Below are positions 74,889 through 124,000 of a DNA stretch of 124,000 nt, one piece after another. The position numbers were made by a program, and so were the translations under genes. Each line of letters opens with the position of its first letter. Position 1 is the stretch's first letter. The notes beneath the pieces are model-generated. The model was not told the origin of the DNA. It did no database searches and saw nothing but the letters and a program-made list of their open reading frames with translations. Source of the stretch: Octopus vulgaris (taxonomy: Eukaryota); assembly GCA_951406725.2 (NCBI GenBank), contig OX597826.1, positions 60,036,001 through 60,160,000 of the forward strand, written 5' to 3'.

Positions 74889-75175
74889 TAACATGGGATC
74901 ATTATAAACGGCAGATTTTAGCCATTTCTCCGCAGATTGAAAAAAATCTGATGAACAACCTTAATCGATTTTCGAACATTATTGAGTTCTCATCAGAGAC
75001 GTCTACATTATTCTGACAGTTTCCAGAGACACAAACAGTCAATCTCTTTCTATACTCAACATATGCAGCAGTTACTCAGTTACTCTATGGAGGAGTAACT
75101 AACTTGATACTGATCTTAGTCCATACAGTATCAAGGTACATAAATATGTAACACACACACACACACACATATATA

Positions 75176-95145: not shown

Positions 95146-95426
95146 TGATTAAAAATTTTAAATTGTAATTAGATATAGTGTTGTTTTAGAGGGTTTTAAC
95201 TCCTCTTTCAAACAAGCAGGTACATATTCTACCCTGACTTTTTATAATAACTATATATATATGTGTGAGGGATATTTTCCGTCTCAATATAGCTAACCAC
95301 TAAGGGTGGGTGTTACTGTAGCTTGTAACCCCAGGAGAACATCTTCTCCAGCTGGCTGCCTAAAAACATCCCTCACATTGTCGTGCAGTTACTGTTTATA
95401 CCTCGTTCAGAGATTTATTATTGCTG

Positions 95427-105710: not shown

Positions 105711-105730
<20 letters not shown>

Positions 105731-105825
105731 GCATAACCTATAGTGGTTAGCCATATTGAGATGGCAAATATACCTCACATTGTCGTGCAGTTACTGTTTA
105801 TACCTCGTTCAGAAATTTATTATTG

Positions 105826-105860
<35 letters not shown>

Positions 105861-117880: not shown

Positions 117881-118669
117881 AACTAATGAAAGCGCAGCAA
117901 CTCCGTTGCAACAGCTCTGAAGATAAAATCGTTGCCAAATCTCGACAATTAAATGAGGAGTTCACCATGTAATTAACTAATCAATTTCGTGCCTTTCACG
118001 CCTTCGAGTAACTGCTGCGTGTGTTATTCTTTACGCTACGGGAGTTTAAAAACCATGTAACCTTAATAAATAATTGCATTAGCAATATTCTACAAACTAC
118101 ATTGAAGTAGTCTAACGTCACCGAGAACATACAACGATGGTGAAAAATACACAGAGGTGTCTCACGTACCTATCAATATATTATAACGCTATTCTTAATC
118201 GATGACACAATCAACGCCTTTCTTCACCGCCAAAATTATGTCTAATTAAATAACAGATACGCTACATGGTATATGCACAACGTAATACCTGTTTGCTACC
118301 GGGAATCATTGTACACTATGATCTATGTCTCCTCAGACAGACAGCTGTTTAGATAACGATCATTCATTCATTTTATATATTTCCCTGGCTAGACGTTTTG
118401 TCTGAAAATGTCTGACAGTTTACATTACAGCTGCGCTCAATCTATTTTTTTCGGAAAAAGAGGAGGCGGGGGTAATATAACTTCCGGACTCTTTCGCATT
118501 TTCTCATATTTTCTATAATTGTCTTAAACTTCAATTACGCCGATACATACTTCTCCTTAAGTTTATAAATTAGCACAATGGATATATATAATATATATAT
118601 ATATATATATAAATACATATATGTATCATAACGAGGGGACAGCTACCATATATATATATATATATATAT

Positions 118670-118880
118670 ATAGTTAATCCAAACATGAACAAAGAGAAAA
118701 CACAATAACACGAGGACGTGGAACAAGTATAGTGTTATTTGACGCTCAGGAAAGGAAAGAAAGAATGGGAATTTAACGTTTCGAACGGAGCACTTCGTCA
118801 GAAATATACAAAAAAATGAAAAATCCAAGAATGGGAAGACGGAGAAAGAAAATCGCCAAAGATAGACTCACGGTCACATA
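118670..118880 (-). mobile_element. H1 element
   Basis: H1 tail and 5' motif GGCGATTTTCTTTCTCC. Confidence 0.8.
118771..118805 (-). ncRNA. Minimal type I hammerhead, intact core, weakened stem II
   Basis: ATTT-CTGACGA-A-GTGC(TCC)GTTC-GAAACGTT-AAAT. Confidence 0.6.
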
Positions 118881-120384
118881 TTGAAGCGACCGGAAGGGAA
118901 TGGGGGGAAGTTCATTCAAAGACAGTAGAGTGCAAGAGAATGAGGTATGTGTGTGTGGGGGATGTATATATATATATAATAGATACAACATTGCATGATT
119001 TCGGATGCGTCCTTAATTTCTTGTTAGATTCATAGAAAGGAGGTTGCGAGATACACCGTATTTTCGGCAGGGGAGACCTTTCCTTCCAAAAGGAAAGAAA
119101 AACATAGCAGTATGAAAAGAACTGACACCAGTTCAAGCTTGGTACTTCGTCCGTCGAACTCAATAGAAAGAAAGAAAGTGTTAATGTAATCTGGATTTGA
119201 ACTCAGTGCGCACTGAGCCGGGTGATTGTACAAAACGATTTCTTCGATTCTTTCACATATATGTAAGTGTACATATACGTATGTATGTATGTATGTATGT
119301 ATGTATGTATGTATGTATGTATGTATGTATGTATGTATGTATGTATGCATGTATGTATGTATGCATGCATGCATGCAATATTATTAATAAATATCTTAGC
119401 AGACAATAATGGATGAATGAAATTAAATAAAAACAGTTGATAATGATGCCGATATTAGCTTTCATGTTTATGGTTGGGGTGGTTTTGATGATCACGATGA
119501 TGATGATGACGATTACGATGATGATGTGATGATAATTACATTATTTTATTTGCGGGCAATGTTCCAAAGTCGTGTTGGTTTTACAAGGCAGGAATTGAAT
119601 ATTCTTACAAAAAGTGTCGGCGGATTTATGCTATATATGACTGCAAAATTAATCACAATAAAAACTGAGTTAAGATGACATAACAACTTGTAACTATAAC
119701 GATAAAGAAAGACAGAATCATCGGGGAGAACAATAAAACATAAATTGGTAAATTTTACACAAACCTCGAATATACTTAACGCGCGAAAGACAAGGGTTTA
119801 GGACCAATCCTTAGTTCAGTGTCATAAGTCCACGCAGTCTCAGAAATTTTGCCACTCTCACGCACATTTCATTAAAAACCTGGAAAATATTACATCCATT
119901 TTATTCATTCAAACATGTTAATATGTGCTGATAGTGGTACACATTTAGGCGCAAGCTGCACTGACAGTTTGAACGTCTACGTCTGCTGAAGGTTGTATGT
120001 CTTTATATAATCTAGGTACGCATACATGTTTGTAAATGCGGCTAGGCTCCGTGCGTTAGTATTTGCTCATTAGGACATTGAAGTATTTAACACAGTGACA
120101 AGAATATTTCGTTACAGATTGGTTGGTCAAGTTATGACCCCCTTCTCATGAAACATGCCACAACAGGCTATGTTTATTGTCCCACTGTTTACAATTTTAC
120201 CATTTCGTTACTCGGTCTCTCTCTCTCAATCTACTGCACCCAAAAAAACATATCTAATTAGATTTCACATTGAATATAGTTGGTTAGAGAATTATTATTG
120301 CTGTCGAACAGATTTTCGAAATCAGCAAATGTATTTTGCTTGAAAATCTATATAAATATCCTGCAGAGTGGGTTGTTCGTCGAG

Positions 120385-120457
120385 GAAGCGGTTGCCTACC
120401 ATACGTTGATAATAGGCAAACACCTTGAAACCTAGGTCCGTGTGTGGTTTCCGCTTC
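120385..120457 (+). ncRNA. Type I hammerhead ribozyme candidate with U3-A8 variant core and extended stem I
   Basis: GAAGCGG-TTGCCT-ACCATACG-TTGATAA-T-AGG(CAAACA)CCT-T-GAAA-CCTAGG-TC^-CGTGTGTGGT-TT-CCGCTTC; GUC site after 120438. Confidence 0.65.
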
Positions 120458-120614
120458 ATCGGGGAATTATCTCCCTTTGCAGGATAGAGGACGCCGTGAT
120501 GGTGTCAAGCCTATCTGGCGACGTTGATGTTCGCCTGGTGCTAAATGCAACAGTAACACCCCCACCACCCTGCCCTGTCCCTAGCCATATTCAGATGGCT
120601 TTAGTCCCTTATGT

Positions 120615-120699
<85 letters not shown>

Positions 120700-120707
<8 letters not shown>

Positions 120708-120946
120708 ATATTTCGGAATGGTCATATTGCCAGTTTAGCCAATAAAAACACACGCACTATATATTTGGTGTTATTTTGCTTCAGTGATATTTATTTTTAC
120801 ATTAATCTTAATCTTATTTTGGCCGAAATAAGATTAAGATTAATGTAAAAAATAAATATCACTGAAGCAAAATAACACCAAATATATAGTGCGTGTGTTT
120901 TTATTGGCTAAACTGGCAATATGACCATTCCGAAATATAACAATAT
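120700..120946. repeat. 247 bp essentially perfect palindrome
   Basis: Arms 120700-120822 and 120823-120946 differ by one indel and one T/G mismatch beside the GGCC centre. Confidence 0.95.
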
Positions 120947-121000
120947 CTGTTTCAACACACGACTTCACATAAAAAATCTTGCACAACAAATATTTAAACG

Positions 121001-121034
<34 letters not shown>

Positions 121035-121060
121035 CATACGTATATATACATATCTATATC

Positions 121061-121102
<42 letters not shown>

Positions 121103-121227
121103 CGTACATATATGTATAATATATTATATGTATATATATATATATATATATAGATATATATATATATATACACAGACACAAAAAAAAGAGAAAGAAACAA
121201 TGATATTTGGAGAGTAAAATATGTATA

Positions 121228-121530
121228 CTCTTTTACGTGTTTCAGTCATTTTACTGTGGCTATGCTGGAGCACCGCCTTTAGTAAACACACCAGCATCGG
121301 TATCCAGTGATGTTGGTGGACAAACACTCACACACAAACACACACACACACACATACATATATATACATATATACGACGGGCTTCTTTCAGTTTCGTCTA
121401 CAATATCCACTCACGAGGGTTTGGTCGGCCCGAGGCTATAGTAGAATACACTTGCCCAAGGTGCCACGCAGTGGGACTGAAGATGGAATCATGTGGCTCG
121501 AAGGAAGCTACTTACCACACAGCCAATTTT
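121228..121530 (-). mobile_element. SINE family A with internal deletion
   Basis: Family A motifs. Confidence 0.85.
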
Positions 121531-121819
121531 ACACCTATGTATGTACATATATATAAGTATATATTTATGTATACGAGGGTGCTTGAATACCTGTGCTAAA
121601 TGCAATGGCAGGTAACGGTGGGGGAAGTTTTGGTTTAATGGTTATCACTATGGAGACACAATTGACAGGCACATGGTTCGTTTCCCTGAGGTGATTTTGT
121701 TCAGTTTTGTGCGTCTTATGCAGCGCTGTGAATGTATTTAAATCTTAAGCATTTACATCATATTAGACAGGCACAACTATACACACACACAAAAACATAC
121801 ATACATACATACATACATG

Positions 121820-121887
<68 letters not shown>

Positions 121888-121976
121888 CACATATATAATA
121901 TGTTATATAATATAATAAATTACATACGTATATATATTTTTTATTTTTATATGTATATATATATACATACACACAC

Positions 121977-122010
<34 letters not shown>

Positions 122011-122910
122011 ATGTGTGTGTGCTTATGTGTGTGTGCGTGTGTGTGTGTATGTGTGTGTGTGTGGGGGGGGGGTATGTATTCCAATATAAACAAAGGTATT
122101 CCAATACAAACACGTGCGGGACCGATGAGCTTAAAATTATGTTAATTCTACCATTGAAATACGGATTAATTCTTTAAAATATTACAAAATAAAATGTAAA
122201 TGGCTAATCATATATTACGAAAACATTTATATTTAATACCTTATAATATACAATAAGCTTCTTATATTTTAAATCTGCTGAAATTCTGAGTTTTCACATG
122301 TACACGCAGATGCTGACAAATCCAATGCATTGAACGTATTTGTGAAACATCCATAAACTTTTTAATGGCCTCTGACACGGCACATACAAACAAGCGCTTA
122401 CTTAGTAACTTAAATGAAACAACGGATTGATAATAACTACTGAGATCCATAACTAAATAATATTTGCTAATATGCGCATATTCTGCTGTGAAATTTGTTA
122501 AGAAATCGTACCTAGCTTAACTGTAACTATGTTGCTAATTTCTCAGCATTGAAGATTTTTTCTCTTACTGTTAATAACGTTTAAAATCATATGACCAGTT
122601 ATACAATGAAAACATACTGGTACTTTATAAATAATTTCTTTTAAGATTAAGGAGATATGGCTGCGTGGTAAAAAAGTTTGCTTCTCAATCACATAGTTCG
122701 GGTTTCTGTCCCACTGCCTGACAATTTGGACAAGTGCCGTGCATCATAGTCTCAAGCCGATCAGACCCTTGTAAGTGGATTTGATAGGCGGAAACTGAAA
122801 GAAGCTCGTCGTACTTATATATATATATTTATATATATATACATGTCTCTACGAGAGATTTAGAAATTTAGTATTTCTGATATATATATATATGTGTGTG
122901 TGCGTGTGTA

Positions 122911-123015
<105 letters not shown>

Positions 123016-123062
123016 GAAAAAACAAGTCAAATTAGAAAATGCTAAAGTAATTTTATAAAGAA

Positions 123063-123110
123063 CATTTCAGTACCGGTTTCGGTCATTTTGAGACCTTTTC
123101 AACTGTAACG
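123063..123110 (-). ncRNA. Minimal type I hammerhead with U3-A8 variant core
   Basis: CGTTACAG-TTGAAAA-GGTC(TCAAAAT)GACC-GAAA-CCGG-TA^-CTGAAATG; G10.1-C11.1 present, palindromic ACCGGU helix III, GUA site. Confidence 0.7.
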
Positions 123111-123234
123111 ATTAAATAGAAAAATTAAAAGAAAAGATTTTTTAAAGGAATATTTGTATAGTGTTCAAATATAAGTGGCATTCTGCCTTTCTCTGCCTCC
123201 CTTGTTTGCGCTTGTGTGTTCTAGGCCGTTGTGG

Positions 123235-123298
<64 letters not shown>

Positions 123299-123404
123299 TA
123301 CATATATATATATGTATACATATATATATGTATACATATAAAAAAAACAGTAATACAGAGATAAAATACTCAAACTTTTTTAAAATACCTTTTAAAATCA
123401 AGGA

Positions 123405-123790
123405 TATGAGGGTGTGTGGTTAGAAGCTTGTTTCCAAACGACATGGTTCTGGGTTCAGTCCGACTATGTGGCGCCTAGAGCAAGAGTCTTCTACGATAAC
123501 TTCGGGTTGACCAGAACCTTGCCACTAGATTTGATAGACGGAAGCTGAAAGAAGCCCGTCATATATATGCGAGAGTGTGTCTATGTATCTATGTTTTTCA
123601 CGCCACCATCGCCCCACACCCAATATTGGGGTGTTTACGTCCCCATAACTTAGCAGTTGATAAATATAATCGATAGAGTAACAGCTAGGATAACATAGAA
123701 TGAGTTCTGCTCTCGATTTCTTCGACTAAACGCATTAAGGTGGTGCCCCAACATCGCCGCAATCAAATGATTGAAGGAAGCAAAAAAATA
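123405..123790 (+). mobile_element. SINE family A (old, diverged)
   Basis: Recognisable head, middle and tail. Confidence 0.75.
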
Positions 123791-123802
123791 TACACACACA
123801 CA

Positions 123803-123857
<55 letters not shown>

Positions 123858-124000
123858 AGGACTGGCTGTGTGATAAGTAGTTTGCTTACAATGCACAAGG
123901 TTCTGGGGTCAGTCCCATTGTATGACACCTTGGGCAAGTGATTTCTACTGTAATGAAATTACGACATGCATATGGTGCGTTATAAGAATTTATAGAAAGG

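What the first reader, a model, noticed from the sequence alone, without database searches (positions are those of the whole stretch)
120385..120457. Hammerhead with a compensatory U3-A8 core, long stem I and a built-in alternative pairing
Seen: every hammerhead element in type I order. Stem I has 8 bp (ACCATACG/CGTGT..GGT, 2-nt bulge) plus 7 bp (GAAGCGG/CCGCTTC) across an internal loop. The core reads UUGAUAA instead of CUGANGA, followed by stem II AGG/CCU, GAAA, a fully palindromic helix III (ACCUAGGU) and a GUC site. Established: C3 and G8 form a Watson-Crick pair in the active fold, so changing both to U3-A8 is compensatory and would be missed by standard CUGANGA searches. Palindromic short helix III is typical of dimer-cleaving hammerheads of Penelope-like elements and retrozymes. 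Inference: the stem I loop UUGCCU is exactly complementary to AGGCAA in stem-loop II, so it could act as a tertiary contact or an off-switch. Weak point: U-U at 10.1/11.1.
Basis: partly seen in the sequence, partly recalled or inferred. Interest (0 to 1): 0.8.

Follow-up and report, generated by a model that had tools for sequence, protein, structure and literature searches.

The report
Variant hammerhead ribozyme in retrozyme repeat
The sequence is a genuine but derived copy of the hammerhead self-cutting RNA motif, carried by a 359-base mobile repeat of the Penelope-like/retrozyme kind; its U3-A8 core is a variant already described in other animals, so this is a useful annotation and not a new kind of ribozyme.

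Summary
A relaxed hammerhead descriptor hits only this site in the window and nothing in 40 shuffles. The motif lies in a solo copy (120284-120616) of a 359-bp repeat with at least 306 genome copies. These copies form partial tandems and head-to-head inverted pairs, are 5'-truncated, have an optional 45-bp tail and abut (TA)n. That is the architecture of Penelope-like elements and animal non-LTR retrozymes.

Sister families of the same unit carry, at the same position:
- a fully canonical core (CUGACGA, G10.1-C11.1; 78% identical unit);
- a U3.G8 form (88-90% identical unit; Rfam Hammerhead_1 26.7 bits);
- U3-A8 forms.

Hammerhead ancestry is therefore secure. Stem I, stem II and the self-complementary helix III covary across families. 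Two copies are predicted to fold into a double hammerhead.

Three points lower the claim:
- U3-A8 is already published (Perreault 2011; Cervera and de la Peña 2014).
- The UUGCCU/AGGCAA pairing depends on a base found in a minority of copies.
- U10.1.U11.1 is a derived loss of a G-C pair.

A C3.A8 mismatch subfamily has also spread, and a rod-like fold fits the data nearly as well. Catalysis is untested.

The parts
120284..120616 (+). Solo copy (333 of 359 nt) of the retrozyme-like repeat unit, 99.1% identical to the family consensus. It lacks the 26-nt joint TGGAGCAGTTACTGTCTATATCTCAT seen between tandem copies.
120385..120391 (+). Distal stem I, 5' strand (GAAGCGG).
120392..120397 (+). Internal loop of stem I (UUGCCU). 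The first two positions are the most variable sites of the motif across the family.
120398..120405 (+). Proximal stem I, 5' strand (ACCAUACG).
120406..120412 (+). Core strand U3 U4 G5 A6 U7 A8 A9.
120413..120426 (+). Stem-loop II: U10.1.U11.1 mismatch, AGG/CCU, loop CAAACA.
120427..120429 (+). Core G12 A13 A14.
120430..120437 (+). Helix III, self-complementary ACCUAGGU (A15.1...U16.1). It gives 2 bp plus a CUAG loop in a monomer and 8 bp between two copies.
120438..120438 (+). C17. The predicted cleavage site is between 120438 and 120439.
   Evidence: position inferred from hammerhead numbering.
120439..120448 (+). Proximal stem I, 3' strand (CGUGUGUGGU).
120451..120457 (+). Distal stem I, 3' strand (CCGCUUC).
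120618..120703 (.). (AT)43 microsatellite abutting the 3' end of the copy, as at other insertions of the family.

Best explanation
120385-120457 is the hammerhead domain of a non-coding 359-nt retroelement unit of the Penelope-like-element / animal non-LTR retrozyme kind (45% G+C).

Shown:
- The unit is homologous end to end with sister units in the same genome that carry a fully canonical hammerhead at the same position.
- The window's family is a derived lineage in which C3-G8 has become U3-A8 (with a U3.G8 minority) and G10.1-C11.1 has become U.U.
- Stems I and II and the self-complementarity of helix III are maintained through changes on both sides.

Inferred mechanism: in transcripts of tandem copies, or between two transcripts, two motifs pair through ACCUAGGU to make an 8-bp helix III. 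This double hammerhead competes with a more stable monomeric rod-like fold that sequesters the core. Each core then cleaves after C17 (120438). The products are unit-length RNAs with 5'-OH and 2',3'-cyclic phosphate ends. A host RNA ligase can circularise them, and a reverse transcriptase of a Penelope-like element can copy them into (TA)n-associated sites.

The window copy is a solo monomer. It is most likely a dead-end insertion that could cleave only in trans with other family transcripts.
For: Anatomy and chance: (one descriptor hit in the window, none in 40 shuffles).

Repeat family and architecture:
- At least 306 copies carry the motif.
- Copies sit as a 5'-truncated copy, a 26-nt joint and a full copy, or as head-to-head inverted pairs with variable truncation. 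A 45-nt tail is optional and the 3' end abuts (TA)n.
- These are the traits described for Penelope-like elements (PMC8557442) and for retrozymes of 170-400 nt, 350-390 bp in mussel (PMC7229834).

Homology to canonical hammerheads:
- Family 1c: GCCAUGCG-CUGACGA-GAGG-CAAUA-CCUC-GAA-ACCGGU-C. 37 copies in 353-359-bp tandems; 78% identical to the window's unit over 357 nt.
- L094 type: UUGACGA-GAGG..CCUC-GAA-ACCUGGGU-C. 88-90% identical unit, scored 26.7 bits (E 0.0036) by Rfam Hammerhead_1.

Covariation on the joint alignment A3: 90.6% of cells paired. Changes on both sides occur in stem I (AU/GC and UA/CG, the latter with UG as well), in stem II 10.4/11.4 (GC/AU; 4 copies) and in helix III 15.3/16.3 (CG 16, UA 9, UG 8) and 15.4/16.4 (GC 21, UA 10, UG 3). 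All six helix III versions are self-complementary: ACCGGU, ACCUAGGU, ACCUGGGU, ACUGCAGU, ACUGCGGU, ACCGCGGU.

Invariant nucleotides: U4, G5, A6, A9, A13, A14, A15.1 and C17 are invariant, and G12 and U16.1 nearly so (90% or more), across both families.

Dimer: the cofold minimum for two 73-mers is the double hammerhead, -55.8 kcal/mol against 2 x -25.7. For family 1' it is -39.3 against 2 x -14.8.

Literature: U3-A8 variants are natural and were reported active in vitro (PMC3088659). U3-A8 occurs in hammerheads of Penelope-like elements (PMC4209133).
Against: - No cleavage data exist. Minimal hammerheads of Penelope-like elements cleave poorly in vitro (PMC4209133).
- G10.1-C11.1 is lost in this family: U.U in all 24 aligned sequences and in nearly all listed copies. 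G10.1 is a metal-binding position (PMC7151607). Stem II has only 3 bp.
- The monomer hammerhead fold is 12 kcal/mol less stable than the rod-like fold (-13.7 against -25.7).
- The rod fits the alignments almost as well (98.8% paired within family 1; 85.8% jointly, with one pair of its own, 16/38, covarying).
- A C3.A8 mismatch subfamily spread to 30 copies at about 20 loci, and U3.G8 copies are common (about 21% and 17%). Amplification therefore does not require a Watson-Crick 3-8 pair.
- The 5' truncation points of the insertions do not cluster at the predicted cleavage site.
- No autonomous partner element was found.
- Rfam does not score the site.
Confidence: 0.6

Rival explanations
1. Vestigial hammerhead. 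The motif descends from a working hammerhead, but in this family it is catalytically dead or nearly so (U.U at 10.1/11.1, 3-bp stem II, altered 3/8). The family spreads anyway, because mobilisation by a Penelope-like element does not need self-cleavage. What is conserved is the long hairpin, used for something else such as recognition by the reverse transcriptase or RNA stability.
For: - Loss of G10.1-C11.1 relative to the sister families.
- The C3.A8 and U3.G8 subfamilies amplified.
- The rod-like fold is the monomer minimum and fits the alignments.
- The motif caps a helix of about 130 nt, 120356-120487.
- Naiad elements proliferate without canonical hammerheads (PMC8557442).
- Hammerheads of Penelope-like elements have low activity in vitro (PMC4209133).
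- Insertion 5' ends do not cluster at the cleavage site.
Against: - The invariant core nucleotides are unchanged across families that differ by 10-33% elsewhere in the unit.
- Stem II and the helix III palindrome covary, which the rod alone does not require. Rod pairs 17/37 and 21/30 are broken in 21 of 34 sequences.
- The dimer minimum is the double hammerhead.
Confidence: 0.33
2. Chance look-alike: a hairpin in a repeat that happens to resemble a relaxed hammerhead.
For:
- Rfam gives no hit.
- By my estimate, a 2.8-Gb genome should hold on the order of a hundred chance matches to so loose a descriptor.
Against: - There are 0 hits in 40 shuffled windows.
- The unit is homologous over its whole length to units with a canonical hammerhead at the same position.
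- The genomic context is the one where such hammerheads are expected.
Confidence: 0.02
3. A switch built on the UUGCCU/AGGCAA pairing is the functional feature of this element.
For: The complementarity is an exact 6 bp in the window copy. A 4-5-bp GCCU/AGGC core of it is present in most subfamilies.
Against: - T120392 is a minority state where the consensus has G. The two 5' loop positions are the most variable in the motif.
- The best structure that contains the helix is 5.9 kcal/mol above the minimum (-19.8 against -25.7).
- In the minimum-energy fold, GCC pairs with GGU 120446-448 instead.
Confidence: 0.05

Closest known systems
Minimal hammerheads of Penelope-like elements, including the U3-A8 variant of Schistosoma mansoni Cercyon elements (Cervera and de la Peña 2014, PMC4209133)
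   Same: Type I order; U3-A8 in place of C3-G8; very short self-complementary helix III implying action as a dimer; location in tandem or inverted repeats of a Penelope-like element; missed by standard descriptors.
   Different: - This motif has a long two-part stem I (about 15 bp) and a short stem II (3 bp), whereas the Schistosoma motifs have stem II of 7-8 bp and stem I of 4-5 bp.
- It has a U.U mismatch at 10.1/11.1.
- It is carried on a 359-nt non-coding tandem unit, with no link found to a full-length element.
Animal non-LTR retrozymes (Cervera and de la Peña 2020, PMC7229834; Li et al. 2026 preprint, 10.64898/2026.07.22.740005)
   Same: Non-coding tandem units of 170-400 nt with a type I hammerhead (350-390 bp in mussel); G+C below 50% (45% here); strongly self-paired predicted RNA; proposed dependence on Penelope-like elements.
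   Different: Published retrozymes carry canonical cores and were shown to cleave and to form circular RNAs. Neither expression nor cleavage is known here, and the core is non-canonical in most subfamilies.
Newt and axolotl satellite hammerheads that cleave as double hammerheads (Forster et al. 1988, as cited in PMC4209133; PMC7229834)
   Same: Weak helix III in the monomer and a stable extended helix III between two copies, so that tandem transcripts cleave and monomers do not.
   Different: Those have the canonical C3-G8 core and G10.1-C11.1.
Natural U3-A8 hammerheads reported by Perreault et al. 2011 (PMC3088659)
   Same: The same two-position covariation of the C3-G8 pair.
   Different: Reported there for several examples in a broad survey, with no repeat-family context described for them.

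Membership tests
Hammerhead ribozyme, type I (Rfam RF00163, clan CL00010) | Three helices around the core in the order stem I 5' strand, CUGANGA, stem-loop II, GAA, stem-loop III, UH, stem I 3' strand. | tested here: met
   The helices are kept in the family and sister-family alignments.
Hammerhead ribozyme, type I (Rfam RF00163, clan CL00010) | Conserved core nucleotides C3 U4 G5 A6 N7 G8 A9, G12 A13 A14, A15.1-U16.1, H17. | tested here: inconclusive
   Ten of twelve are present. Positions 3 and 8 are U and A, a documented natural covariation (PMC3088659, PMC4209133). Sister units have C3-G8 at the homologous position.
Hammerhead ribozyme, type I (Rfam RF00163, clan CL00010) | G10.1-C11.1 closing pair of stem II (usual, with a metal-binding G10.1). 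| tested here: not met
   U.U in the window copy and in all 24 aligned family sequences. G-C in 29 of 32 family 1' copies and in the 1c and L094 types.
Hammerhead ribozyme, type I (Rfam RF00163, clan CL00010) | Score at or above the curated Rfam threshold (34 bits). | tested here: not met
   No hammerhead family at E<=10 at the site and nothing at gathering score. The closest relative with G8 and G10.1-C11.1 (L094) scores 26.7 bits. The canonical-core 1c unit is also missed, because its helix III has no loop.
Hammerhead ribozyme, type I (Rfam RF00163, clan CL00010) | Site-specific self-cleavage 3' of H17. | not testable with these tools
   Needs in vitro transcription and cleavage mapping.
Hammerhead ribozyme, type I (Rfam RF00163, clan CL00010) | Homology to accepted hammerheads. 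| tested here: met
   The 359-nt unit is 78% identical over 357 nt to a unit with CUGACGA/GAGG..CCUC/GAAAC..GUC at the same place.
Penelope-like-element-derived non-LTR retrozyme | Non-coding tandem unit of 150-450 bp bearing a type I hammerhead. | tested here: met
   359-bp period, 353-360 bp in the sister families. Only spurious ORFs. No tRNA-like part.
Penelope-like-element-derived non-LTR retrozyme | Insertion architecture of Penelope-like elements: partial tandems, head-to-head inverted 5'-truncated copies, a short tail at one end, microsatellite association. | tested here: met
   compared with the description in PMC8557442.
Penelope-like-element-derived non-LTR retrozyme | Expression as unit-length linear and circular RNAs. 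| not testable with these tools
   No transcript data are available here.
Penelope-like-element-derived non-LTR retrozyme | Sequence relationship to the terminal repeat of an autonomous Penelope-like element in the same genome. | tested here: inconclusive
   ORFs next to two longer family 1' copies gave no RT or GIY-YIG hit.

The most novel reading that the evidence does not exclude
One genome holds a natural mutational series of a single homologous hammerhead, and each state has amplified as its own repeat subfamily: C3-G8, C3.A8, U3.G8 and U3-A8, and G10.1-C11.1 against U.U. If the U3-A8 / U10.1.U11.1 form of the window's family still cleaves as a dimer and yields circular RNAs, it would be a new functional core variant that lacks the metal-binding G10.1. 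If it does not cleave, the series would show that retrozyme spread does not need ribozyme activity.
Probability: 0.3. Interest if true: 0.55.

Novelty: new member of a known kind. Interest (0 to 1): 0.35.

Why it matters
It gives a concrete annotation for a repeat superfamily of roughly a thousand copies (at least 306 + 588 + 37 + 30). A separate family of about 1,900 copies in a 2.8-Gb cephalopod-sized genome also carries hammerheads that Rfam cannot see.

It extends the U3-A8 hammerheads of Penelope-like elements from flatworms to a mollusc-sized genome. It also offers a ready-made natural panel of 3/8 and 10.1/11.1 variants in otherwise homologous units. That panel could test how much core variation dimeric hammerheads tolerate, and whether cleavage is needed for retrozyme mobility. 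It does not change what is known about the hammerhead mechanism.

Tried and rejected
- Rfam at permissive thresholds on 6 kb and on 161 nt found no hammerhead hit at the site.
- A covariance model (R1) built from the genome's canonical 42-nt hammerheads was too sequence-specific. It found neither this motif nor the second U3-A8 motif at E<=10.
- Covariation within family 1 alone has only one pair changed on both sides and cannot separate the hammerhead fold from the rod-like fold.
- A8/G8 as a footprint of ADAR editing copied back into DNA: 10 distinct A>G variants against 5 T>C among 58 copies, which is not significant. Dropped.
- 5' truncation points as a record of cleaved RNA ends: one of about 24 lies at 120437-9 and the rest are scattered. 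No support.
- Conservation of the core block between subfamilies A and D: a 38-nt run without differences at 11% divergence is only slightly longer than the longest run expected by chance. Not used as evidence.
- A metagenome scan for the motif gave 0 matches.
- Search for an autonomous partner upstream of two longer family 1' copies: no RT or GIY-YIG domain.
- tRNA-derived SINE: no tRNA-like sequence.

Full report
**Observation.** The sequence at 120385-120457 (+) reads GAAGCGG-UUGCCU-ACCAUACG-UUGAUAA-U-AGG-CAAACA-CCU-U-GAA-ACCUAGGU-C-CGUGUGUGGU-UU-CCGCUUC.

**Context.** The motif lies inside a repeat. The window is G000:C13:60036001-60160000 of a 2.8-Gb genome. That size matches the Octopus vulgaris assembly described in PMC13282606, but I could not confirm the species.
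- The window copy spans 120284-120616. It is 99.1% identical to the family consensus and is followed by (AT)43.
- In other loci the copies are joined by a 26-nt segment into a 359-bp tandem period.
- Insertions typically consist of a 5'-truncated copy followed by a full copy, or of head-to-head inverted pairs truncated at variable points. Some end with a 45-nt tail and all examined abut (TA)n.
- The unit is 45% G+C and non-coding, and is predicted to be strongly self-paired (circular minimum -115.7 kcal/mol, z = -4.4).
- These are the published hallmarks of Penelope-like elements (pseudo-LTR tandems, inverted 5'-truncated copies, a 30-40-bp tail, (TA)n targets; PMC8557442). They also match animal non-LTR retrozymes (170-400-nt tandem units with type I hammerheads, 350-390 bp in mussel; PMC7229834).
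- The window copy is a solo monomer. No second copy lies in the window.

**Family variation.** The pattern YTGATRA-N(6-30)-GAAACCTAGGTC has 306 genome matches. Of the first 100 listed, 99 belong to this family and all have U3. Position 8 is A in about 79% and G in about 21%. No copy has CUGAUGA in this context. U.U at 10.1/11.1 is universal. Subfamilies differ in loop 2 (CAAACA, CAAUACA, CAAAUA), in the stem I internal loop and in stem I pairs. Pair 402/442 is U.G, C-G or U-A, and pair 398/448 is A-U or G-C. The first two bases of the internal loop are the most variable positions.

**Sister families settle the ancestry.** A 100-bp fragment at 105729-105828 resembles the unit's 3' end. It led to related units elsewhere in the genome. 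At the homologous position they read:

| Family | Sequence at the hammerhead position | Copies and relation to the window's unit |
|---|---|---|
| 1c | GCCAUGCG-CUGACGA-GAGG-CAAUA-CCUC-GAA-ACCGGU-C | 37 copies in 353-359-bp tandems; unit 78% identical over 357 nt; fully canonical core |
| C3.A8 subfamily | as 1c, but CUGACAA | 30 copies at about 20 loci |
| L094 type | ACCAUACG-UUGACGA-GAGG-CAAACA-CCUC-GAA-ACCUGGGU-C | unit 88-90% identical; Rfam Hammerhead_1 26.7 bits, E 0.0036 |
| 1' | ACCGCCCG-UUGA(C/U)AA-GAGG-CAACAA-CCUC-GAA-ACUGCAGU-C | U3-A8 in 32 of 32 copies; G10.1-C11.1 in 29 of 32 |

In the GAGG context the counts are about 488 U-A, about 100 U.G, 37 C-G and 30 C.A. The split of the 588 U3 copies comes from 17 G8 among the first 100 listed. 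The window motif is therefore a derived member of a hammerhead-bearing superfamily. Relative to the canonical relative it carries three changes: U3, A8 and U10.1.U11.1.

**Structure support across families.** On the joint alignment A3 (34 distinct sequences), the hammerhead model with helix III written as a self-pair has 90.6% of cells paired. Five pairs change on both sides: two in stem I, 10.4/11.4 in stem II, and 15.3/16.3 and 15.4/16.4 in helix III. All six helix III versions are self-complementary once G.U is allowed. In a monomer the inner bases could not pair, so this points to an intermolecular helix. The rod-like alternative is less well kept (85.8%; two of its inner pairs are broken in 21 of 34 sequences), but it has one covarying pair of its own, 16/38. 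Both folds may therefore matter. Folding two 73-mers together gives the double hammerhead as the minimum, at -55.8 against 2 x -25.7 kcal/mol. The monomer hammerhead fold is only -13.7. Family 1' behaves the same way, -39.3 against 2 x -14.8.

**Mechanism.** The inferred mechanism is a dimer-dependent hammerhead that processes tandem retrozyme transcripts into unit-length RNAs, as proposed for Penelope-like elements and retrozymes. The hammerhead ancestry, the architecture and the maintained helices are shown. Cleavage, circularisation and the dependence on a Penelope-like element are inferred.

Several results argue against full activity:
- The G10.1-C11.1 pair is lost and stem II has only 3 bp.
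- The rod-like fold is the stable monomer form.
- Minimal hammerheads of Penelope-like elements have low activity in vitro (PMC4209133).
- A C3.A8 subfamily has amplified.
- Insertion 5' ends do not cluster at the cleavage site.

I put about 0.95 on the motif being a hammerhead homologue and about 0.5 on it still cleaving in vivo.

**Comparison and novelty.** U3-A8 covariation in natural hammerheads was reported in 2011, with activity of such variants already shown in vitro (PMC3088659). It was reported again in hammerheads of Penelope-like elements of Schistosoma in 2014, with about 1,300 hits (PMC4209133). Short palindromic helix III and action as a dimer are standard for this class. This is therefore a new member of a known kind. 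The unusual points are the U.U at 10.1/11.1 and the presence of all four transition-linked 3/8 states as amplified subfamilies in one genome.

**Also in the window.** A second, sequence-unrelated U3-A8 hammerhead-like motif lies at 123051-123116 (-). It belongs to a family of about 1,900 copies in which 99 of 100 listed are U3-A8. U3-A8 cores are therefore common in this genome's Penelope-like repeats.

Noticed in passing
window 123051-123116 (-): A second hammerhead-like motif with a U3-A8 core: CGUUACAG-UUGAAAA-GGUC-UCAAAAU-GACC-GAA-ACCGGU-A-CUGAAAUG. It has a G10.1-C11.1 4-bp stem II and a palindromic helix III (Rfam HH9 20.9 bits, E 0.14). It sits in a fragment of about 230 bp lying between two (TA)-rich microsatellite tracts. 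The motif has about 1,900 genome copies (1,878-1,999 by pattern), often as inverted pairs 0.2-4.3 kb apart. 99 of 100 listed are U3-A8 and one is U3.G8.
   Followed up: partly
G000 loci L090-L093 (C1:20003000, C25:45118480, C4:80857100, C14:27442300): A subfamily with a C3.A8 mismatch (CUGACAA) is otherwise nearly identical in the hammerhead domain to the canonical C3-G8 subfamily (loop 2 is CAAAUA against CAAUA). It has spread to 30 copies at about 20 loci. Either an A+.C wobble is tolerated or cleavage is not needed for spread.
   Followed up: partly
window 105729-105828 and 95264-95425: Short 5'-truncated fragments of the sister family 1' (3' end ...GCAGTTACTGTTTATACCTCGTTCAGAAATTTATTATTGCT). 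The first lies between two (TA)n runs and the second is a head-to-head inverted pair.
   Followed up: yes
window 120700-120946: A perfect inverted repeat: 99-nt arms, 100% complementary, 49 nt between them. By eye the spacer is itself largely palindromic. It lies directly after the (AT)43 that follows the retrozyme copy. It could be a foldback element, an inverted duplication or an assembly artefact.
   Followed up: no
window 74946-75000 (-): GUCU-CUGAUGA-GAAC-UCAAUAAU-GUUC-GAAA-(18 nt)-UC-AGAU: a canonical hammerhead core with 4-bp stems I and II but a poor helix III. It scores only 10.9 bits with my own model and gets no Rfam hit at the gathering threshold. It may be chance or a decayed copy.
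   Followed up: no
G000 loci L037-L059: The genome's commonest Rfam-detectable type I hammerhead is GUAC-CUGAAGA-GACC-CAGAACA-GGUC-GAA-ACAUGUGU-(C/U)-GUAC followed by CCAAUAAA. Several copies read CCGAAGA (U4C).
   Followed up: no
L065 613-837: Head-to-head inverted retrozyme copies give strong but sub-threshold plant-miRNA hits in Rfam (MIR810 128 bits, MIR7723 115 bits), simply because they form long perfect hairpins. This is a source of false miRNA calls in such genomes.
   Followed up: no
window 118000-124000: Dense (TA)n, (CA)n and (TATG)n microsatellites produce dozens of sub-threshold miRNA-family hits (mir-3149, mir-297, mir-1277). All are low-complexity artefacts.
   Followed up: no
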